Shown: positions 8,811 to 46,513, numbered from the stretch's first letter. The stretch is 46,656 nucleotides of DNA from Octopus bimaculoides (GCF_001194135.2 NC_068997.1:49596082-49642737), one strand, 5' to 3'. Numbers and translations are program-made. Notes: generated by a model from the sequence alone, not told the origin.

Positions 8811-8914
8811 CTATTTTAGTCTTATTGTTTCAGACATTTGACTGCGGCCATGCTGGAGCACCGCCTTTAGTTGAACAAATCGACACCCGGGACTCATTCT
8901 TTGGAAGCCTAATA
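8713..8914. mobile_element. Tail-to-tail pair of family C 3' ends around (TG)n
   Basis: 8713-8741 (+) and 8827-8855 (-) are reverse complements at 27 of 29 positions. Confidence 0.8.
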
Positions 8915-9708
8915 NNNNNNNNNNNNNNNNNNNNNNNNNNNNNNNNNNNNNNNNNNNNNNNNNNNNNNNNNNNNNNNNNNNNNNNNNNNNNNNNNNNNNN
9001 NNNNNNNNNNNNNNNNNNNNNNNNNNNNNNNNNNNNNNNNNNNNNNNNNNNNNNNNNNNNNNNNNNNNNNNNNNNNNNNNNNNNNNNNNNNNNNNNNNNN
9101 NNNNNNNNNNNNNNNNNNNNNNNNNNNNNNNNNNNNNNNNNNNNNNNNNNNNNNNNNNNNNNNNNNNNNNNNNNNNNNNNNNNNNNNNNNNNNNNNNNNN
9201 NNNNNNNNNNNNNNNNNNNNNNNNNNNNNNNNNNNNNNNNNNNNNNNNNNNNNNNNNNNNNNNNNNNNNNNNNNNNNNNNNNNNNNNNNNNNNNNNNNNN
9301 NNNNNNNNNNNNNNNNNNNNNNNNNNNNNNNNNNNNNNNNNNNNNNNNNNNNNNNNNNNNNNNNNNNNNNNNNNNNNNNNNNNNNNNNNNNNNNNNNNNN
9401 NNNNNNNNNNNNNNNNNNNNNNNNNNNNNNNNNNNNNNNNNNNNNNNNNNNNNNNNNNNNNNNNNNNNNNNNNNNNNNNNNATATAAATATACACATACG
9501 CAAATGTATTTAAACACACTCACACACACATATGTATGTCTATATACATACGTATGTATATATATATATATATATGCATACATATGTGAATGAGCACACC
9601 CGTCTATATATAAATATATAAACGTAAATACTTGTGTGTGTGTTTGTATGTGTGCGGTGTACGTTTGTAAACATACAAAATATATATTTGTAAATACATT
9701 TGTACTTG

Positions 9709-11912: not shown

Positions 11913-11965
11913 TAATTTAGTTGACGGACCACCAGGGGTCGTTGACCACCAAGTTGGGAAGCACT

Positions 11966-12078
11966 GGCTTAGTGGATACGAAGCTAGTATCACAACCTAA
12001 CCACATGGTTCCGGGTTCGATTACTCTTCGCGACACCTTGAAAATGTATCTTCTTTTACAGCTTCGGATTAATCAAGT
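11966..12078 (+). mobile_element. SINE family C, degenerate head
   Basis: A-box-like GGCTTAGTGG and AACCACATGGTTCCGGGTTCGATT (B box), as in the 19047 copy. Confidence 0.6.
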
Positions 12079-12930: not shown

Positions 12931-15900
12931 ATCCCAGCCGCCACCAGCCTGGTAGACACAGCCACAGACGCTAAAATCCTTCCTCGACGATAATTATGCA
13001 AAGAGCCAGACTGGGAATAAATTAATACATTAACTGTGTATAAACATCCTTACTTCTCGCTGTGAACCCATGTTTACCCCAGGGGCAGTCAGATGGCTTC
13101 TCTGCATTTATATTTGTTTGGCTTCTTTATTGTTGTTGTTATTATTGTTGTTATTGTTGTACTTTTCTTTTTAAATATTTTTCGTACTTTTTCTCTCGCT
13201 TCTTCGTATCTCTTCTTCTCCACCTCTTTTTTCTTCTCCTCTTTTTCATCTTCTTTTGCTTTTTCTTCTTTTCTTCTTTTCTACTCCCCCTGCTCCTTGC
13301 TTCCCCTTTTTTCTCCGTCTCCTTCGTCTCCATGTTTCTGCTTGTTCTTCGGCTCCTCCTCCTCTTTCTCATCTCCATCTTCATCTTTTTCCTCTTTCTC
13401 GTTTCCTTCTCCTATTCCTCTTTCCTCGCTATTGTTATTTCTTCTTCTTCTTCTTCTTCTTCTTCTTTTCCTTCTTTTTCTTCTCCGTCTTCATATCTTT
13501 ACTTCTACAACTTCTCCTCCTCCTCCTCCTTCTCATCTCCTCTTCCTCCTTCTCTTCCAACAACAACAGTCCCCACACACACACAATTATACAGCAGGGG
13601 TGCAGAATTGAAACCTCGATGCCCCCATTCACCTTTCTTCACTTCACTGAGGTTAGGGACGTGGTGACGTAACGGAAGTTTACACTGACATCATCCTGCT
13701 TAATAGAAACGGGATTATGGCCTTGACATCGCTGCGCCAAACCTCATTAATAAATTATACGCACAGGTTTATCGGCAATTATGGATTTATTGTAATTGTT
13801 ACTATTATTATTATTATTATTTATAATTATAATTATAGTCTTGTTATTAATTAATATTTTCTAATTGTCCATCGTACATTTGAAAACAACGACCGTGGCA
13901 ACGAGTGGTGNNNNNNNNNNNNNNNNNNNNNNNNNNNNNNNNNNNNNNNNNNNNNNNNNNNNNNNNNNNNNNNNNNNNNNNNNNNNNNNNNNNNNNNNNN
14001 NNNNNNNNNNNNNNNNNNNNNNNNACTGCTGCTGCTGCTGATGATGATGATGGTTGTTGGTGATGATGATGATGTTAGAGGGGATGCTTGAAGTACCTGT
14101 GATGGTTGGGAAGGTGAAGGCAGTGGTGGAGGCTTGAGAGCAATGTGGTTGGGGGGGAGGAGGACTGTGGAGATTATGGAGGTCCTGGTGGGGGATAATG
14201 GTAAACCTTGATGATGCCGATGCTAATGATGATGATGGTGTTGTCGTTGGTGATGATGATGATGATGATGATGATAATGGCACCGATAGACGTCGTCGTC
14301 GTGATGATGACGGTAATGACTGTTGGTGATGGCGCTGGTAGTGGCGGTGGCGATGGCGATGGCGATAGTGATGATGATGATGATGACGATGATGATGATG
14401 ATGATGATGATCGCCATTATCAGCATGAACATGATGATTATGATAACGCTGGCCTACAAAACGAATACATCTTTCATCGGAGATTAAGTTGGCTGTTTTC
14501 TAAACGCGTTTGGAGTCTGGCTCTAAATCCATTTTAAATATCCCAAGCGCAGCACGTCTAGTTTTTTAAATATGGCTGTTTTTTTACTTTTCTACCTCCG
14601 CAATTTTATCTATAATTAAGTCTTATTATATAAATTAAGATCTATTAAATAAATTAGTGTATATTAAATATAAAGAAACCGGGCATGCATCTCATTAATT
14701 TATGCATCATTAATTTTACGCCCATTTTCATAAAATTCATTTGGCTTCACGTGTAATAAAAGAACCTACATTATACTCGCTTTTAAATTTAAATATGTCA
14801 TGGCTATGATTTAAATTCTAAATTTGGTCAGGGTCGACGAGATGTAGTATCGAATAACAGCCAATCACCATTTCTTCATTCCAGAGTTCTTGGTGTCCTG
14901 TTTCCATGGCAAGAATATCTTGAGGGAAGTGTTTTCCTTGCTCATCGCTCGATTACAGCATCTAAATTTTTCTTGAAAGAAAACGTCTTATATTATCCAC
15001 TCACTTCAGTTTTATACATGGTGCTGAAATTTCGTTTCCTTCTCATTGTTTCTAGGTCATAGTAGTATCAGTAGCAGGACTGGTTAAGAGTAGCTAATTT
15101 CAAGCAAGATTGATCTAATGTAATTCAATTTGATTTCAATTTATCTTCCCTTATATTTCAAGATGACTAAATCGTCTATTTCAATTATTGAAACCGGTTG
15201 CATACTTTAATAAAAATATTCATACTTTCTTTTCTTTATGATAAAGTTCTCAGAGCGCTTTCTTCTTTTTGTTTTCCGATATACTCTTTGGGCTGTTTCA
15301 ACCTCTTATTTCATATTAGTAACCTTTCGCAGATATATTGGAACAGACACCAAATCATAAATACGATTCGACTATCGTCAAATGTTTGGAGAGATTTCAC
15401 GAAACTACAAAATTTTTTTGAATACATTTGCTTCCCTTAGCAGTCGCAACTATTACTTTCTTCTCCCCATAATATGAGGGAAGGGAGATCTTGATTGTCT
15501 CATTCTGTAGTAATAGTCGTCTTATCTCCCTCTACAGATAGAGTAGACTCCACCTAGTGTCTACTAGCTCTTTCAATTACTCTATACAACTGCAGTACGG
15601 TACCTATATATATATNNNNNNNNNNNNNNNNNNNNNNNNNNNNNNNNNNNNNNNNNNNNNNNNNNNNNNNNNNNNNNNNNNNNNNNNNNNNNNNNNNNNN
15701 NNNNNNNNNNNNNNNNNNNNNNNNNNNNNNNNNNNNNNNNNNNNNNNNNNNNNNNNNNNNNNNNNNNNNNNNNNNNNNNNNNNNNNNNNNNNNNNNNNNN
15801 NNNNNNNNNNNNNNNNNNNNNNNNNNNNNNNNNNNNNNNNNNNNNNNNNNNNNNNNNNNNNNNNNNNNNNNNNNNNNNNNNNNNNNNNNNNNNNNNNNNN

Positions 15901-16570
15901 NNNNNNNNNNNNNNNNNNNNNNNNNNNNNNNNNNNNNNNNNNNNNNNNNNNNNNNNNNNNNNNNNNNNNNNNNNNNNNNNNNNNNNNNNNNNNNNNNNNN
16001 NNNNNNNNNNNNNNNNNNNNNNNNNNNNNNNNNNNNNNNNNNNNNNNNNNNNNNNNNNNNNNNNNNNNNNNNNNNNNNNNNNNNNNNNNNNNNNNNNNNN
16101 NNNNNNNNNNNNNNNNNNNNNNNNNNNNNNNNNNNNNNNNNNNNNNNNNNNNNNNNNNNNNNNNNNNNNNNNNNNNNNNNNNNNNNNNNNNNNNNNNNNN
16201 NNNNNNNNNNNNNNNNNNNNNNNNNNNNNNNNNNNNNNNNNNNNNNNNNNNNNNNNNNNNNNNNNNNNNNNNNNNNNNNNNNNNNNNNNNNNNNNNNNNN
16301 NNNNNNNNNNNNNNNNNNNNNNNNNNNNNNNNNNNNNNNNNNNNNNNNNNNNNNNNNNNNNNNNNNNNNNNNNNNNNNNNNNNNNNNNNNNNNNNNNNNN
16401 NNNNNNNNNNNNNNNNNNNNNNNNNNNNNNNNNNNNNNNNNNNNNNNNNNNNNNNNNNNNNNNNNNNNNNNNNNNNNNNNNNNNNNNNNNNNNNNNNNNN
16501 NNNNNNNNNNNNNNNNNNNNNNNNNNNNNNNNNNNNNNNNNNNNNNNNNNNNNNNNNNNNNNNNNNNNNN

Positions 16571-16607
<37 letters not shown>

Positions 16608-21856: not shown

Positions 21857-22520
21857 GTGAAGGCACGTGGCCTAGTTGTGGTTAAGGCGTTGCACGCACA
21901 ATCGCAGGATTGCAATTTCGATTCCCGGACAGGGCGACGTGTTGTGTTTTGTTCCTGAGCAAAACAGTTCGGCAAGACTTCCGCCCCCACCCCACCCCAC
22001 CCNNNNNNNNNNNNNNNNNNNNNNNNNNNNNNNNNNNNNNNNNNNNNNNNNNNNNNNNNNNNNNNNNNNNNNNNNNNNNNNNNNNNNNNNNNNNNNNNNN
22101 NNNNNNNNNNNNNNNNNNNNNNNNNNNNNNNNNNNNNNNNNNNNNNNNNNNNNNNNNNNNNNNNNNNNNNNNNNNNNNNNNNNNNNNNNNNNNNNNNNNT
22201 TTTTCTAAATATGCGGAAAAATACGGACATTACACTTCTGACAAAAGTTTCAAAACATTCCTGTAATTACAGTTAGGGCTAGGGTTTTAGGTTTAGGGTT
22301 AGTGTTGGGGAAAAAGTCAAAATTTAAGAATTGGTGGGGTGGGGAGAAAGGGGGAAATTTCACAATGCCGATTTTTGGCAATTTTCCAGAACCTCCGTAT
22401 CCGAAAAAGTGGGGTGGGGTCTTGGCAAAAAATTTTTTTTAAATAAATTTGGGAGAAAATGGTGAGTGACGGGCGGAAGTCTTCCCAACACTTCATTTCA
22501 TGTTGCTTCTGTCCAGCAAC
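21857..22520 (+). mobile_element. SINE family B interrupted by a MITE
   Basis: Head GTGAAGGCACGTGGCCTAG..TTTCGATTCC runs to 21970; the body resumes at 22487 (AACACTTCATTTCATGTTGC). Confidence 0.8.
21971..22486. mobile_element. MITE with 16-bp TIRs and 8-bp TSD (Merlin-like)
   Basis: GGCAAGACTTCCGCCC / GGGCGGAAGTCTTCCC (15/16); flanks AACAGTTC / AACACTTC. Superfamily inferred from GG termini and 8-bp TSD. Confidence 0.8.
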
Positions 22521-24882: not shown

Positions 24883-25030
24883 TATAAATAATGAAGTGAA
24901 ACTGAACCAGTGTGCGTGCTTATTATTGGCATAATGACCCACAAAAAATACAACCAATATAATGTATGTAATACACAATAGACACACGTACCGTGTTTTG
25001 TTTTATATTTACATGATGCTTTCTTTTCAG

Positions 25031-25612
25031 GACTTTCGTGCGGAAAACAGGGGGCAGACATTGTTTTCGCTTTAGACGCGTCTTACAGTATTTGGCCGGT
25101 CCATTTCCAGAAACAGTTACAATTTGTGGTGAATGTCGTAGAACAGTTCCCCATTGGTGCCAAACAAAGTGACTTCCATGTTGCTATAGTAACGTATAGC
25201 GAGAACATCACTGTTCACTTTAACCTGCGTGACTTCATTCACAAGCATCAATTAAAGAAAGCCGTTATGCGGATCACCCAGTACTCCCCAGGGGGAACTT
25301 ACACCCACAAGGCCCTCGAATATATACGCCGACAGATGTTCACCGTTCGCAACGGAGGACGAACCTATTCGGATAAAATCGTTGTGGTAATCACGGATGG
25401 ATTGTCACAGGACCCAAAAGCTACACGAACTGAAGCGGCACGAGCGCATTACGAAGGCATTCAAATTTTTGCCATCGGCGTCGGAGCAGGCGTAGATAAA
25501 CATGAACTAGAGATGATAGCTTCATCACCGCCTCGGAACCACGTGTTCACAGTGGATAACTACTCAATTCTTAATTCGATTAAACGGAAGGTGGCCAGGG
25601 AAACGTGCAAAG
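25031..25612 (+). CDS. VWA domain exon 1 of a matrilin/collagen-VWA-like protein
   Basis: TTTTCAG| acceptor and G|GTGAGT donor; 582 nt, phase 1-1. Reads LSCGKQGADIVFALDASYSIW (MIDAS DxSxS)...GGTYTHKAL...VVITDGLS...IFAIGVG...RETCK. Confidence 0.95.
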
Positions 25613-25691
25613 GTGAGTATATAGTGCTATTTAATCACGCACACACACACGCATATACACATCCATACACACTGCCTAAGTCAGTGTGTGT

Positions 25692-25815
25692 GTATTTCTT
25701 GAGAATTTAGGCTTCCCAAAACCAGAGAGGAGAAAGCTAATTAGAAGACTGCAGATACAAGCCATCAGTGGAACTGTAAGAATTTGTAAAACTCTCAAAA
25801 AGTTTAGCATTGTGA
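25692..25815 (+). mobile_element. 3' end of an RLE-type (R4/NeSL-like) non-LTR retrotransposon
   Basis: FLENLGF...LIRRLQIQAISGTVRICKTLKKF resembles the C-terminal motif of these ORFs (from recall, not searched). Confidence 0.5.
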
Positions 25816-37640: not shown

Positions 37641-38086
37641 GTGAGTGTGTAAAAGCTGTTCTAAAGACAACTCGGTTTCCCGTTGCCATAAGATGACAGT
37701 GTATTCACCGTAGTGTCTTGATTTTTTAAATATTGTTCTTAGCCAAAGATCACAGGAGACAGTAATATGTTGAGCTCTGAGCTTATGTTAAATGGAAAGC
37801 ACTTTGAGTATCTTTCTCAAAACAACTACTTACTTGATCAGATCCTGAGTCAGAATCTGCTACAGAGATATTTATGAATTCATGCATTTGAGCTGGGAAG
37901 GCTATTGTATGTTACTTCTCTCAGTATTCACATAAACGAAAGAAAGAATAATATATTCCCCCATCTTTCGACAACAGAACAACCTCCCTTCCTTAATTAT
38001 CCCCCTTTGTTACTTACTCTCTAATACTAAAGAAAATAAACTTTGTACTTTCACTTGTATTTTATTTTTATTTTTATTATTACTAG

Positions 38087-38653
38087 AGTGTGGAGGCAAG
38101 CCAGCGGACGTATACTTTCTACTAGATTCTTCCAGTAGTATATGGCAACCTGATTTTAAGAAAGAACTATCGTTTGTGGAACATGTTATGGATCTTTTCA
38201 ATACAGAAAACAGTAACACGAAGATCGCTTTGGTTACCTTCAGCGACAAGGTACAACCAGTAATAAGTCTTGGCTCCTATAATAAAAGCAAAGTGAACGA
38301 GGTCCTTTCTCGGCCGGAAATTTATTTGACTGGTGGAGAGACAGATACGGCTAAGGCCATTAAATATGTGAGAGAGAACGGTTTCCAGGGACCACTGGCA
38401 CGTAAAGGAGTGGCCCAAATTATGGTCGTTTTGACCGACGGCCAGTCAAGAGATTACAACAGTACGGTTCGAGAATCTCGTCTCACTCACCAGGCAGGTA
38501 TCTATGTGTTCGCTATAGGTATCGGAAAGGATGCTGATTACAAAGAATTGAAGCAAATCGCCAGTGACCCGGATATAAACTTCGTCTTTCGTGTCGATGT
38601 CTTTGATGCATTGGATTCAATAAAAGATATTTTGGTTTTCAAAACTTGTGAGG
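38087..38653 (+). CDS. VWA domain exon 2
   Basis: T-rich ACTAG| acceptor and G|GTGAGT donor; 567 nt, phase 1-1. Reads CGGKPADVYFLLDSSSSIW (MIDAS)...GGETDTAKAI...VVLTDGQS...VFAIGIG...FKTCE. Confidence 0.95.
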
Positions 38654-38774
38654 GTGAGTTTTCAAAGATATATTTATTGCCAGAGAACAGCGACTACCTC
38701 TTGCTACCTACCCGCTTACAACCATGACAGTCGAAAAGGAGGCAAACACATAGATAGATAAACACACATACACG

Positions 38775-40440: not shown

Positions 40441-41267
40441 TGTATTTGTGCGTGTGTATATGTATATATATGTGTGTGTGTGTGTTGCTTCATTGATCAG
40501 GCCCCCCCCTTTAATTTGTTGTATGCCAATCACCTTTTGCACGATCATAAGAATACTAACCCGTCTCCTCCCTCACTCTTACCCCATTACTCCTACTCTC
40601 TATATTTCATTTCAACACCATCTCTCTCCCTACTTCTCTCTCTTTCATTTGTTTTACCTCTCTCTTCTTCATCTTTTTACCCACCTTTCGTTTTTGCCTT
40701 TTACCATTTTCCAAGTCCTATTTGCCATGATTTGCCTTCTATGATCGCTGTTAATACAAAATGGAAGTTTTGTTCAACTTCCTTATGCATGTGCATATTG
40801 ATTTTTTATACATATATTTTTTATACATATATTTTTTATACATATTTTTTTTATACATATATATTTTTTACGCATTCTTATACATATGCGAGCTATACGC
40901 ATGCGCATACTTAATTTTATGCACGTATAAATGATTTTTCGAGGCATGCATATGTATATTGTCAAATATAACGGAGACGGCACTCACTGAGTCTCGACAC
41001 TGGCCTTAGTGTTTATTTTGTCAAATGTTTTATCTCCAATCATACGAAATTATTATCGTATTTGACCATTTGTTCTTGACTATGTGTTTTGTTCCATACG
41101 AGAAATGTCTACGAGGATGAGAACGTAAATAGTTGAACTCTACACAAAGTATTTAAATCTTCGATCAAATTCTTCTGCAGTTGTTCTCTACAAACTTTTG
41201 TGGTTCGGGTTGGAATTTTGTAGTGGAGCAACCGCCCACTGTCATGATCCACGACTATATCTGTCAG

Positions 41268-41560
41268 TACAATTCTATATTTAAGAGATGAGGAATTATG
41301 TACATTGTTTACATTTGACGGATATTTGTCCTCATCTTGTTTGTTGTTAACACAACGTTTCGGCTGATATACCCGCCCCAGCTTTCATCAGAAGTGTCTT
41401 GGAGAAATTTCGAACCTGGGTTCTCTCTCATTCCTAAGTTATTTTTAGATGTTATTATTATTATTATTATTAATATTATTCAGGTCATTGCCTGGAATCA
41501 AACTCGGAATCTTAGGGTTAGTAGCCCGCGCTCTTAACCACTACACGATATGCCCGTGGG
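41268..41560 (-). mobile_element. tRNA-headed, hammerhead-bearing element, full-length copy
   Basis: A box GTAGTGGTTAAG, anticodon-like arm GGG-CTACTAA-CCC, B box GAGTTTGATTCC, (AAT)n, hammerhead core and a structured tail ending TATAGAATTGTA. Confidence 0.85.
41349..41398 (-). ncRNA. Minimal type I hammerhead ribozyme (Penelope-type), stem III intact
   Basis: GACAC-tt-CUGAUGA-A-AGCUG(loop)CAGCC-GAAA-CGU-U/GUGUU. Confidence 0.7.
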
Positions 41561-41770
41561 CGTAGTGGTTAAGAGCGCGGGCTACTAACCCCGAGATTCC
41601 GAGTTTGATTCCAGGCAATGACCTGTATCATCAAAAAAATACCTTAGGAATGAGAACCCAGGTTCGAAATTTCCTCAAAACACCTGATGAAGGCTGGAGG
41701 GTATATCAGCCGAAATTCTGTGTTAGCAACAAATAAGATGAGGACAAATATCCGTCAAATGTAAATAATG
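41559..41770 (+). mobile_element. Second, inverted copy of the same element, 3' truncated
   Basis: Reverse complement of 41301-41545, with 62/64 identity in the head and more differences in the body. Confidence 0.85.
41679..41724 (+). ncRNA. Minimal hammerhead, stem III mutated
   Basis: AACAC-CUGAUGA-A-GGCUG(gaggguauau)CAGCC-GAAA-UUCU-GUGUU: stems I and II are perfect, the ACGU palindrome is lost. Confidence 0.65.
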
Positions 41771-41879
41771 TATATCTGTCAGAGCCATGAACAGAACTAA
41801 CGATCATTTTCTGCAGTGATTCCTAATGTATAAAACAAAGTTGTGTAACAAAAGTAAATCATGATGAACGTAACTGTTT

Positions 41880-42250
41880 GCAATAGTTTTAATATACGCT
41901 GCAGGAGCTGGAGTTACCACGGCTGCTGGCACCAGTCTTGCCCTCCGGTCGATCCTCGTTAACGGATTTGAAGTGTACTCCTTCAGATCGCGGGACCTCG
42001 ACAGAGTCCCGCGTCGTTATTTTTCGTCACTACCTCCCCGTGCTGGGAGTGGGTAACTTGCGCGCTTGCTGCCTTCCTCGGATACTGTGGCCATTTCGCA
42101 TGCTCCCTCTCTGGAATTCGAAACCTGAATCTTATTTACCCATTTCCACTACAGTCAACATTCATCTTGCCTATCGACAGTTGAGAGGGCGCACTCGCGG
42201 GAGGAAGCCTCGTTGCGCGAAGGCTAATCGATCGTAGCCCGTGCGATTGC
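41880..42250 (-). pseudogene. 18S rRNA fragment (roughly the nt ~270-620 region)
   Basis: Minus strand carries GTGCCAGCAGCCGTGGTAACTCCAGCTCC, GGAAGGCAGCAAGCGCGCAAGTTACCCACTCCC, GAGGTAGTGACGAAAAATAAC and GCCCTCTCAACTGTCGAT: universal SSU motifs with substitutions. Confidence 0.92.
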
Positions 42251-43192
42251 ACTGACAGCCCTCCAAAATTTCGTGATGTATCCTCAAGGTTTCATCATGA
42301 CCAAGTATGACCTAACTGTGTTTATTTCCGATATTGAAATCATGGCATTTGTATAGCCATTTGGGTAGTGCTTTTGTTGTTTTATGTTGTGTTATTATAG
42401 TTTTTTGTAGCTGTTTTATTTTTCTCTTTTTTGCTGGAAGTTAAAATTCAAATGTAAAAATAAAAGCAAGATATAAATGTCTTGATCTTTAACATTTGAG
42501 AAAATGGTTTTGAATGAATGAAAGTTCCACAGCTATTTCACGCAGTTTGATCCTTCTTCACCTCTTCTTCATCAGCAGTATAGATCTCCTTCTCCTCCTA
42601 CTCCTCTTCATCATCATCGTTCTCATCATCATCCTCGCCCTCAACATCATTATCGTCGTCGTCGTAATTGCAATCGTCAGCACCATCATCGTCGACATCG
42701 TCGTCATCATGTCCATCATCTGTCATCGTCATCAGTATCATCTGTTTCATCGTAGTCATATGCGTATACACATACAGAGAGGTGGGGATTATGATGATGA
42801 TGGTGAAGGCAATGATGTTGACGATGGCGGCGAGAACTACGATGATGATCGCTGTATCCAAATACATTGTCACGTGTTAAACACACGTGCGCGCACACAG
42901 TATGTGTGTGTGTGTGTGTATGCATGTCTGTGTGTGTGTCTGCGTCTGTGTGTGTGTGTGTGGTGTGTGTGTTTGAATCTGTGTGCGCTGGCAATTATTC
43001 TTTGTGTCAAATATTTTACACCATTTTTCTCCTTCAAGCCATCAAATACTACCATCTAAATATCTTTCTATCTGGTCGTCTATATATTCTTATCCACTTC
43101 GTACACACACATACACACACACACATACACGCACTCTAATGCACAAATCTCCGCTCCTCACATTCATCTCGCTACTACCTACATTATCCAAT

Positions 43193-46195: not shown

Positions 46196-46513
46196 TGGTA
46201 TTCCGTCAGTTACGACGATAAGTGTTCCATTCAGCCAATCAACTGAACGGTCTGCTCATGAAATTAGCATGCACCTGGCTGAGTACTCCACAGACACACG
46301 TACCCTTAAAGTAATTCCCAAGGGGATTCCGCGTAACAGAAAATGTCATTTGGCTGACCCTTCAAATTACTGGTACAACTTATTTTGCTATCTGCATCAA
46401 CTGAAGTAACGTGAAATAAAGTGTCTCACTCAAGGACACAAGGCGTCGCTTGAAATCGAACTCACGGCATCACGACCGAGTACCAAATACCCTATCCACT
46501 AACCCATGCGCTT
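46196..46513 (-). mobile_element. SINE family B, near full length
   Basis: Head with B box GAGTTCGATTTC, the GAGACACTTTATTTCACG body, and tail GTCGTAACTGACGGAATACC on the minus strand. Confidence 0.75.

What the first reader, a model, noticed from the sequence alone, without database searches (positions are those of the whole stretch)
41268..41770. tRNA-headed small retroelement carrying a Penelope-type minimal hammerhead ribozyme
Seen: each arm has a tRNA-like head (A and B boxes, anticodon-like arm, no T4 terminator in the unit), then stem I (R)ACAC, core CUGAUGA, one extra A, a 5-bp stem II, GAAA, a loopless palindromic stem III ACGU, U-slash cleavage site and GUGUU. The two copies have complementary lesions (left: 2-nt insertion and a stem II mismatch; right: stem III lost), so an intact consensus can be rebuilt from the window alone. 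Established: minimal hammerheads with palindromic stem III are typical of Penelope-like elements and cleave as dimers; the schistosome Sm-alpha repeat is a tRNA-derived hammerhead precedent. Inference: this is a Pol III-driven non-autonomous element (SINE/retrozyme hybrid) mobilised by Penelope rather than LINE machinery. I do not know of its description in cephalopods but cannot check.
Basis: partly seen in the sequence, partly recalled or inferred. Interest (0 to 1): 0.88.

Follow-up and report, generated by a model that had tools for sequence, protein, structure and literature searches.

The report
Fossil twin SINE with hammerhead relic
A 503-bp insertion made of two head-to-head, mutated copies of a small tRNA-promoter retroelement carries a dead Penelope-type mini hammerhead ribozyme; its insertion scars point to Penelope-like rather than LINE machinery, but this is one old locus and the family could not be surveyed.

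Summary
Window 41268-41770 is one insertion flanked by a 12-bp target-site duplication (TATATCTGTCAG). It holds two inverted, heads-in copies of a ~213-250-nt element, 88.8% identical. Each copy has tRNA-type A and B boxes at canonical 44-nt spacing, no T4 run, and a minimal type-I hammerhead motif about 46 nt from its 3' end.

Neither ribozyme copy is intact. The left copy has a UU insertion and an A10.1·C11.1 mismatch. The right copy has lost helix III and U16.1. An intact motif appears only by mixing states from both copies (16 of 512 chimeras), so ancestral integrity is inferred, not shown.

New evidence supports Penelope-type integration: the duplication around the whole twin, both arms starting within 7 nt of the element's 5' end, and a 35-nt extension on one side only. 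The literature reports that combination for Penelope-like elements and not for LINEs.

Not testable here: copy number, consensus, partner element, Pol III transcription, cleavage. Rfam and ARAGORN call nothing. Tiny hammerheads of this type, opposite-strand pairs of them, and SINE-like hammerhead carriers (schistosome Sm-alpha) are already known.

Verdict: a fossil of a probable new variant of a known kind; moderate interest.

The parts
41256..41267 (.). Left copy of the 12-bp target-site duplication TATATCTGTCAG
   Evidence: Exact 12/12 direct repeat abutting both ends of the insertion. A repeat of 12 nt or more arose in 0.07% of shuffled flanks and 0.6% of real window pairs at the same spacing.
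41268..41302 (-). 35-nt extension beyond the 3' end of the left copy, absent from the right copy (one-sided 'tail')
   Evidence: The arm alignment ends at 41303/41770; the extra 35 nt lie between the left arm and the duplication. It has no significant similarity to the element or its flanks. It fits the 30-40-bp one-sided extension of Penelope-like insertions.
41303..41348 (-). Left copy, 3' tail (no poly(A), no simple repeat)
41349..41398 (-). Left copy, minimal hammerhead-like motif. Core boxes, palindromic ACGU helix III and the U cleavage-site nucleotide are present. It is disabled by a UU insertion before C3 and an A10.1·C11.1 mismatch.
   Evidence: Its minimum-free-energy fold is not hammerhead-like.
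41403..41417 (-). Left copy, second B-box-like motif AGGTTCGAAATTTCT in the body
   Evidence: Read from the sequence; meaning unknown.
41438..41482 (-). Left copy, A-rich linker expanded into a (TAA)n microsatellite
   Evidence: 25-nt length difference from the right copy.
41494..41555 (-). Left copy, tRNA-type head: 5' GGGCATA (41555-41549), A box TCGTGTAGTGG (41548-41538), B box AGTTTGATTCC (41504-41494)
   Evidence: A/B scan. The 5' end lies 7 nt upstream of the A box, as in a tRNA. There is weak nhmmer similarity to the other tRNA-type heads in the window.
41556..41557 (.). GT junction between the two heads
41558..41623 (+). Right copy, tRNA-type head: A box GGGCGTAGTGG (41558-41568), B box AGTTTGATTCC (41602-41612). 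It lacks the first 7 nt present in the left copy.
41624..41643 (+). Right copy, A-rich linker
41660..41674 (+). Right copy, second B-box-like motif AGGTTCGAAATTTCC
41679..41724 (+). Right copy, minimal hammerhead-like motif. Helix I (5 bp), CUGAUGA, bulged A, helix II (6 bp, G10.1-C11.1) and GAAA are intact. Helix III and U16.1 are lost (AUUC instead of ACGU).
   Evidence: It is the only core-only descriptor hit in the window, 0.06 expected. Its minimum-free-energy fold forms helices I and II, z = -2.5.
41725..41770 (+). Right copy, 3' tail
41771..41782 (.). Right copy of the 12-bp target-site duplication

Best explanation
What it is: a fossil of a single retrotransposition event. Two copies of a short (~213-250 nt), non-coding, tRNA-promoter-type retroelement were inserted heads-in and tails-out at one staggered break.

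Anatomy of each copy (shown): a tRNA-type A/B-box head, an A-rich linker, a body with a second B-box-like motif, a Penelope-type minimal type-I hammerhead motif about 46 nt from the 3' end, and a tail without poly(A).

Proposed life cycle (inferred):
1. RNA polymerase III starts at the internal A/B boxes. It reads through the unit, which has no T4 run, to a downstream T-run.
2. The 3' module (hammerhead fold plus tail) mimics the 3' end or pseudo-LTR of an autonomous Penelope-like element. That element's reverse transcriptase and GIY-YIG endonuclease use it in trans.
3. Both 3'-OH ends of the cleaved target prime cDNA synthesis on separate element RNAs. This gives the inverted twin, the 12-bp target-site duplication and the 35-nt extension on one side.

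In master copies the hammerhead would act only when two motifs pair through the palindromic ACGU, as reported for Penelope hammerheads, or would serve as a recognition fold.

At this locus both ribozymes are now mutated, and the arms differ by K2P 0.12. The locus probably has no present function beyond being able to form a long hairpin if transcribed.
For: - The 12-bp direct repeat sits exactly at both ends of the 503-bp insertion.
- Both arms start within 7 nt of each other, at the tRNA-like +1 position, which argues for a discrete short unit rather than random 5' truncation.
- The A/B boxes are at canonical spacing: 4 pairs in the window against 0.14 expected.
- Neither copy has a TTTT run; one lies 37 nt downstream of the right copy.
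- The hammerhead features shared by both copies are CUGAUGA, a bulged A, GAAA, helix I ACAC/GUGU and helix II GCUGG/UCAGC. G10.1-C11.1 is kept in the right copy and the palindromic ACGU plus U16.1 in the left. The strict descriptor gave 0 hits in 40 Mb of random sequence, while 16 of 512 chimeras pass.
- These features match those that Cervera & de la Pena 2014 give for Penelope minimal hammerheads. Those authors also saw pairs of minimal hammerheads 100-700 bp apart on opposite strands.
- The hammerhead lies near the 3' end, as in Penelope-like elements.
- The tail has no poly(A) or simple repeat.
- No RT or endonuclease domain lies in the 8 kb around it, so it is not the end of a larger in-situ element.
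Against: - This is one locus with two non-independent copies. No family consensus, copy number or covariation is available.
- Neither ribozyme copy is intact, and the intact ancestor requires choosing states with the model in mind.
- Substitution density in the motif (about 5 in 43 nt) equals that of the rest of the arms, so no constraint is visible.
- Rfam finds no hammerhead or tRNA at E<=10, and ARAGORN finds no tRNA at default settings.
- No partner Penelope-like element was found in the window.
- The origin of the 35-nt extension is undetermined.
- Reported in vitro activity of Penelope minimal hammerheads is low even as dimers.
- Cleavage at the predicted site would separate the promoter-bearing head from the last ~51 nt, so the role of cleavage in a monomeric SINE is unclear.
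Confidence: 0.55

Rival explanations
1. The two arms are 5'-truncated 3' ends (pseudo-LTR fragments) of an ordinary autonomous Penelope-like element, inserted as the usual inverted pair. The tRNA-like A/B boxes are a coincidence or part of that element's 3' region. There is no separate SINE.
For: Most genomic minimal hammerheads are thought to be truncated Penelope-like elements, and opposite-strand pairs 100-700 bp apart were seen in S. mansoni. Penelope insertions are heavily 5'-truncated and often carry an inverted copy. No cloverleaf is detectable.
Against: Both arms end within 7 nt of each other, exactly 0-7 nt upstream of an A box with canonical A-B spacing. That is unlikely for two random truncations of a ~3-kb element. 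The head shows weak similarity to the other tRNA-type SINE heads in the window.
Confidence: 0.2
2. It is an ordinary LINE-mobilised tRNA-derived SINE. Its hammerhead-like block is a chance or degenerate resemblance. The inverted pair arose from two nearby insertions or a DNA-level rearrangement.
For: The window holds at least three other tRNA-type SINE heads. Neither hammerhead copy is intact. Rfam gives no hit.
Against: One 12-bp duplication flanks the whole twin rather than each copy. The arms duplicate the same full unit, unlike LINE twin priming, which inverts a different part of one RNA. There is a one-sided 35-nt extension and no poly(A) or simple-repeat tail. The near-complete hammerhead architecture is far beyond chance. 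No similarity to other repeats in the window was found.
Confidence: 0.12
3. It is a foldback or MITE-type DNA transposon with ~215-bp terminal inverted repeats and a 12-bp target-site duplication.
For: It is a nearly complete palindrome flanked by a direct repeat. It folds into a hairpin of -335 kcal/mol, z = -38.
Against: The termini are not inverted repeats of each other, because the left end carries 35 extra nt inside an intact duplication. The polarity is that of a promoter-head-to-tail retroelement, with A/B boxes at the centre. The arms differ by 11%.
Confidence: 0.05
4. It is an assembly artefact or a chance palindrome in a draft assembly.
For: The window is a draft with many N gaps and microsatellites.
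Against: The arms differ by 24 substitutions and 4 internal indels over the 215 aligned nt, so they are not one sequence joined to itself. The target-site duplication is exact and significant.
Confidence: 0.02

Closest known systems
Minimal type-I hammerheads of Penelope-like elements (Cervera & de la Pena 2014, PMC4209133; Lunse, Weinberg & Breaker 2017, seen only as cited)
   Same: CUGAUGA and GAAA boxes; an unpaired nucleotide between A9 and 10.1; G10.1-C11.1; a 5-6-bp helix II; a 5-bp helix I; no loop 3, with palindromic ACGU that can pair only between two motifs; a position near the 3' end of the unit; occurrence as a pair on opposite strands a few hundred bp apart.
   Different: Here the motif sits behind a tRNA-type A/B-box head in a ~213-250-nt unit with no RT-endonuclease ORF or pseudo-LTR nearby. 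Both copies are mutated. Activity was not tested.
Schistosome Sm-alpha / Sj-alpha SINE-like elements with hammerheads (Ferbeyre et al. 1998; Laha et al. 2000; as summarised in PMC6765202)
   Same: A short non-coding retroposon with a Pol III-type promoter and a type-I hammerhead in one unit. Cleavage would separate the promoter from downstream sequence, so multimers matter.
   Different: Sm-alpha carries a canonical, highly active hammerhead with loop-loop contacts and a helix III hairpin, and is often tandemly repeated. The motif here is the loopless Penelope-type variant, the arrangement is an inverted twin, and the host lineage is different.
Penelope-like element insertion architecture and non-autonomous derivatives (Craig et al. 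2021, PMC8557442; e.g. MRC1 of Chlamydomonas)
   Same: An inverted adjacent copy, a 30-40-bp extension at one end only, and a variable-length target-site duplication. Non-autonomous elements that share only the 3' end with an autonomous partner are known.
   Different: There is no pseudo-LTR or tandem partial copy here. The described non-autonomous derivatives are not reported to have a tRNA-type Pol III head. The partner element is unidentified.
Metazoan non-LTR retrozymes (Cervera & de la Pena 2020, PMC7229834)
   Same: Small (170-400 nt) non-coding hammerhead-bearing retroelements of invertebrates, suspected to exploit other retrotransposons.
   Different: Retrozymes are tandem direct repeats with canonical type-I hammerheads and are expressed as circular RNAs. 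This locus has neither tandem repeats nor a canonical hammerhead, and it has a Pol III-type head.
tRNA-derived SINEs of molluscs and cephalopods (OK/OR1/OR2, Ceph-SINEs, CORE, V/Vhc, Nin-DC, MetaSINE families; PMC4824008, PMC4758252)
   Same: A tRNA-type head with A/B boxes, size, composite head-body-tail design, and a target-site duplication.
   Different: There is no detectable similarity to the other SINE heads or bodies in the window beyond the promoter region. The tail lacks poly(A) or simple repeats, and the insertion architecture is Penelope-like. Consensus sequences of the published families were not available for testing.

Membership tests
Penelope-type minimal hammerhead | Conserved core boxes CUGANGA and GAAA at the correct spacing around a helix II hairpin | tested here: met
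   Both copies have them. The right copy is the only core-only hit in the window, 0.06 expected.
Penelope-type minimal hammerhead | Unpaired nucleotide between A9 and 10.1, a G10.1-C11.1 pair, and an enlarged helix II | tested here: inconclusive
   The bulged A is in both copies. The right copy has G-C and a 6-bp helix II. The left copy has A·C at 10.1/11.1.
Penelope-type minimal hammerhead | Helix I (4-5 bp) directly flanking C3 and the cleavage site | tested here: inconclusive
   Right copy: AACAC/GUGUU is contiguous. Left copy: GACAC is displaced from C3 by a UU insertion.
Penelope-type minimal hammerhead | A15.1-U16.1 with palindromic 15.2/16.2 and no loop 3, followed by H17 | tested here: inconclusive
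   The left copy has ACGU-U. The right copy has AUUC-U, so the pair and the palindrome are lost.
Penelope-type minimal hammerhead | Family-level covariation in helices I and II | not testable with these tools
   Only two related copies exist. No relatives were found in the searchable collections.
Penelope-type minimal hammerhead | Self-cleavage as a dimer | not testable with these tools
   This needs in vitro transcription of a monomer, a dimer and a core mutant.
Hammerhead ribozyme (Rfam models) | Match to a curated covariance model | tested here: not met
   No hammerhead family appears at the gathering score or at E<=10. My reading is that loopless helix III variants would not fit those models; that was not tested here.
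tRNA-derived SINE | Internal Pol III A and B boxes at tRNA-like spacing near the 5' end | tested here: met
   The A box has 1-2 mismatches, the B box 2, and the spacing is 44 nt. There are 4 such pairs in the window against 0.14 expected.
tRNA-derived SINE | Recognisable tRNA cloverleaf or homology in the head | tested here: not met
   ARAGORN at default settings and the Rfam tRNA model give no hit. Relaxed ARAGORN hits are as frequent in random sequence. Only weak nhmmer similarity to other SINE heads was found, E 0.8-6.
tRNA-derived SINE | Short, non-coding, flanked by a target-site duplication | tested here: met
   The copies are 213 and 288 nt. There is no Pfam domain. A 12-bp duplication flanks the twin.
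tRNA-derived SINE | Dispersed multi-copy family, with the 3' tail shared with an autonomous partner | not testable with these tools
   The host genome is not available, and there is no other copy in 46.6 kb.
Penelope-like element insertion | Inverted copy adjacent at the 5' end, within one target-site duplication | tested here: met
   The heads-in twin is joined by a GT dinucleotide, and one 12-bp duplication lies outside both arms.
Penelope-like element insertion | 30-40-bp extension ('tail') at one end only | tested here: met
   A 35-nt extension at 41268-41302 is present on the left arm only.
Penelope-like element (autonomous) | ORF with a reverse transcriptase and a GIY-YIG endonuclease; pseudo-LTRs | tested here: not met
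   No RT or GIY-YIG hit in open frames of 38.7-46.6 kb, and no tandem partial copy. At most it is a non-autonomous dependant.
Metazoan retrozyme | Tandem direct repeats each carrying a canonical type-I hammerhead; circular RNA products | tested here: not met
   The copies are inverted, not tandem. The hammerhead is the minimal type. RNA data are not available.
MITE / foldback DNA transposon | Terminal inverted repeats that reach both termini next to the target-site duplication | tested here: not met
   The left terminus has 35 unmatched nt inside the duplication.

The most novel reading that the evidence does not exclude
This locus is a fossil of a so far undescribed class: a Pol III-transcribed, tRNA-headed SINE that borrows the hammerhead-bearing 3' module of a Penelope-like element and is integrated by the Penelope RT and GIY-YIG endonuclease. 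That would be direct structural evidence that Penelope-like elements mobilise small hammerhead-carrying RNAs in trans. It would tie together Sm-alpha-type SINEs, the thousands of 'orphan' minimal hammerheads in animal genomes, and retrozymes.
Probability: 0.35. Interest if true: 0.7.

Novelty: new variant of a known kind. Interest (0 to 1): 0.5.

Why it matters
SINEs are defined as parasites of LINEs. I found no report of a SINE that depends on a Penelope-like element in the searchable literature.

Animal genomes hold thousands of dispersed minimal hammerheads. These are usually dismissed as truncated Penelope-like elements, and the autonomous partner of animal retrozymes is unknown.

A short unit with its own Pol III-type promoter, a Penelope-type hammerhead and Penelope-type insertion scars would offer a simple explanation for part of those orphan motifs. 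It would also give a compact substrate of about 215 nt for studying what the Penelope reverse transcriptase recognises, and whether the hammerhead acts as a ribozyme or as a recognition fold.

If the family turns out to be a LINE-dependent SINE or a truncated Penelope-like element, the locus is ordinary repeat debris.

Tried and rejected
1. Rfam at gathering score and at E<=10, and ARAGORN: no hammerhead and no tRNA. The miRNA-family hits at 41515-41591 are artefacts of the palindrome centre.
2. Relaxed ARAGORN cloverleaves were rejected as evidence. Random sequence gives as many: 16.8 against 16 observed at 80% threshold, 128 against 113 at 70%.
3. Fishing for more copies:
   - Exact-pattern scans of metagenome, viral and prokaryote-genome collections with head and hammerhead blocks gave 0 hits, or 7 chance hits inside prokaryotic or metagenomic contigs with no CUGAUGA upstream.
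   - A concatenated six-frame 'protein' query against the 5.8-billion protein set gave 0 hits.
   - The only related contig obtained through the neighbouring VWA exon (L001, 64% protein identity) has no copy.
5. Origin of the 35-nt extension: no significant match to the element or its flanks. The best was p about 0.04 before correction for 8 tests.
6. A partner element in the window: no RT, GIY-YIG or LINE domains in 38.7-46.6 kb. The rest of the window was not fully scanned.
7. Fold-back duplication of a single copy was rejected. The left flank is a direct copy of the right flank, not an inverted one.
8. Classical LINE twin priming was rejected because both arms contain the same full unit.

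Full report
**Observation.** Window 41268-41770 is a head-to-head inverted pair of one short element. The repeat finder gives 80-nt arm blocks at 90% complementarity. A global alignment of the two copies in sense orientation gives 215 aligned positions, 88.8% identity, 14 transitions, 10 transversions and K2P 0.122. Apart from the right copy's shorter 5' end, the length differences are four internal indels (25, 4, 2 and 2 nt) and a 35-nt terminal overhang. BLASTN and an nhmmer profile of the two arms find no further copy in the 46.6-kb window.

**Boundaries and insertion architecture (new).** The 12-mer TATATCTGTCAG occurs at 41256-41267 and again at 41771-41782. A direct repeat this long arose in 0.07% of shuffled-flank trials, and in 0.6% of real window pairs at the same spacing. 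The second figure is inflated by microsatellites.

The insertion is therefore one unit with a 12-bp target-site duplication. Inside it:
- The left copy (- strand) runs from its 5' end GGGCATA at 41555 to its tail at 41303, and then continues for 35 extra nt (41302-41268).
- The right copy (+ strand) runs from 41558 to 41770 and has no such extension.
- The two heads are joined by GT (41556-41557).
- The left flank is a direct copy of the right flank, not an inverted one. This excludes fold-back duplication of a single copy.
- The unequal termini inside an intact duplication argue against a MITE.
- The 24 substitutions and the indels between the arms exclude an assembly artefact.

**Head.** The right copy has GGGCGTAGTGG, one mismatch to TRGCNNAGTGG, and 44 nt further on AGTTTGATTCC, two mismatches to GGTTCGANNCC. 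The left copy has TCGTGTAGTGG and the same B box. At these thresholds the window holds 4 A/B pairs against 0.14 expected. The other three (11965, 21868, 46506-) are heads of unrelated tRNA-type SINEs, to which the present head shows weak nhmmer similarity.

In the left copy the unit starts exactly 7 nt before the A box, as a tRNA does. The right copy starts at the A box. Two arms ending within 7 nt of each other at that position argue for a discrete short unit rather than two random 5' truncations of a long element.

A cloverleaf is not supported. ARAGORN at default settings and the Rfam tRNA model are silent, and relaxed ARAGORN hits are at the random rate. From memory only, the 3' half of the head resembles tRNA-Arg(ACG), and its A-box region resembles MIR-type heads. 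This was not tested. Neither copy has a TTTT run on the sense strand; the first one downstream of the right copy is 37 nt away.

**Hammerhead-like motif.**
- Right copy, 41679-41724: AACAC / CUGAUGA / A / GGCUGG-AGGGUAUA-UCAGCC / GAAA / UUC / U / GUGUU.
- Left copy, 41398-41349: GACAC / UU / CUGAUGA / A / AGCUGG-GGCGGGUAUA-UCAGCC / GAAA / CG / U / U / GUGUU.

I implemented a minimal-hammerhead descriptor in the spirit of Cervera & de la Pena 2014: helix I of at least 4 bp, CUGANGA, a 0-1-nt bulge, helix II of at least 4 bp, GAAA, a palindromic 0-6-nt insert, U, H.
- Neither native copy passes it.
- The right copy is the single core-only hit in the window, with 0.06 expected.
- In 40 Mb of second-order Markov sequence modelled on the window, the strict descriptor gave 0 hits.
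- The two copies differ at 9 events in the block, and 16 of the 512 chimeras pass. All passing chimeras need the right-copy state at the UU indel and at 10.1, and the left-copy state at three adjacent helix III positions.

The motif as a whole is thus far beyond chance, and it carries the four features those authors say emerged without being imposed by their descriptor: the bulged nucleotide, G10.1-C11.1, a long helix II with a short helix I, and palindromic 15.2/16.2. But 'an intact consensus can be rebuilt' is a model-guided choice between two sequences, not a consensus.

The number of lesions per copy (2-3 in about 43 nt) is what neutral decay at about 6% per arm predicts from an intact ancestor. 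It shows no constraint after insertion. The right copy's minimum-free-energy fold forms helices I and II both in isolation (z = -2.5) and in the full-length unit. The left copy's does not. Rfam's hammerhead models do not match.

**How it most likely worked.** According to Craig et al. [quoted passage not shown] Target-site duplications vary in length because of variable second-strand cleavage by the GIY-YIG endonuclease. The authors state that these features are not observed with LINE target-primed reverse transcription. Cervera & de la Pena also noted pairs of minimal hammerheads 100-700 bp apart on opposite strands in Schistosoma mansoni. The present locus shows all of these: the twin, the 35-nt one-sided extension, a 12-bp duplication, a hammerhead about 46 nt from the 3' end, and no poly(A) or simple-repeat tail.

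The best reading is a non-autonomous, tRNA-promoter-type element whose 3' module is used in trans by a Penelope-like reverse transcriptase and endonuclease, with both ends of the cleaved target priming on separate RNAs. Classical LINE twin priming does not fit, because both arms contain the same complete unit.

What is shown: the anatomy, the target-site duplication, the architecture, and the decay of both ribozymes. What is inferred: Pol III transcription, ancestral ribozyme integrity, and the Penelope partner. No RT, GIY-YIG or LINE domain was found in open frames between 38.7 and 46.6 kb, so the twin is not the end of a larger in-situ element.

One point is open. Cleavage at the predicted site would cut the last ~51 nt off the promoter-bearing part. 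In a monomeric SINE the motif may therefore serve as a recognition fold or act only in multimers, as discussed for Sm-alpha.

**Comparison with the known.** The closest relatives in kind are:
- the Penelope minimal hammerheads;
- the schistosome Sm-alpha/Sj-alpha SINE-like elements, which have a Pol III promoter plus a canonical hammerhead;
- non-autonomous Penelope derivatives such as MRC1;
- animal retrozymes.

This locus differs from each. It has a minimal rather than canonical hammerhead, an inverted twin rather than tandem repeats, and a tRNA-type head rather than a pseudo-LTR. Full-text searches found no report of a SINE mobilised by Penelope-like elements, none linking V-SINEs to hammerheads, and none describing such an element in cephalopods. 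Penelope elements and 235 Rfam hammerhead matches are reported for the giant squid genome. The host of this window was not identified. Its content (VWA exons, several tRNA-type SINE heads, dense microsatellites, N gaps) is compatible with a draft invertebrate assembly.

**Verdict.** The case rests on a single decayed locus and a two-sequence reconstruction. I rate it a new variant of a known kind, interest 0.5, and confidence 0.55 in the Penelope-dependent SINE reading. The main rival, at 0.2, is a pair of truncated ends of an ordinary Penelope-like element.

Noticed in passing
window 41896-42480 (- strand): A fragment of eukaryotic 18S rRNA (Rfam SSU_rRNA_eukarya, 170 bits, model positions 28-600) lies 113 bp to the right of the target-site duplication, outside any rDNA context. 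Only roughly model positions 350-600 are well conserved. It may be an rRNA pseudogene or a captured fragment. Any relation to the insertion is unknown.
   Followed up: partly
window 11965-12024 (+), 21868-21925 (+), 46452-46506 (-): Three further tRNA-type A/B-box pairs at canonical spacing sit at the heads of other, unrelated SINE-like repeats. By eye, the one at 46506- is followed by a CORE-like stretch. With the element studied here that makes 4 pairs, against 0.14 expected.
   Followed up: partly
window 41660-41674 (+) and 41403-41417 (-): Each copy has a second B-box-like motif (AGGTTCGAAAT) in its body, after an A-rich linker. This hints at a dimeric or composite origin: a tRNA-like unit, an A-rich linker, then a second unit.
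   Followed up: no
window 41268-41770: If transcribed as a whole, the insertion folds into a hairpin with an approximately 215-bp stem (-335 kcal/mol, z = -38). That would be a potential substrate for small-RNA or RNA-editing pathways. The miRNA-family hits from Rfam at 41515-41591 are caused by this palindrome centre.
   Followed up: partly
window 41268-41302 versus 41818-41844: The 35-nt one-sided extension shows a borderline similarity (p about 0.04 before correction for 8 tests) to a stretch 47-73 nt into the right flank. This may be chance.
   Followed up: partly
window 24982-25707 (+) and 37936-38724 (+): Two open frames each encode a complete von Willebrand factor type A domain (Pfam VWA, E 1e-44 and 2e-39), probably exons of one gene. 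The insertion lies about 2.5 kb downstream of the second. The only database relative is a 188-aa ORF (64% identity) on an ENA metagenome contig.
   Followed up: partly
window 41173-41186 and 41809-41822: A 14-nt imperfect direct repeat (TTCTGCAGTTGTTC / TTCTGCAGTGATTC) lies about 70 nt to the left of the left target-site duplication and 26 nt to the right of the right one. It is probably chance.
   Followed up: no
window, many places (e.g. about 8900-9480 and 15620-16600): There are long runs of N and very dense TA/CA/TC microsatellites. The window comes from a gapped draft assembly, so repeat content near the gaps is under-represented.
   Followed up: no
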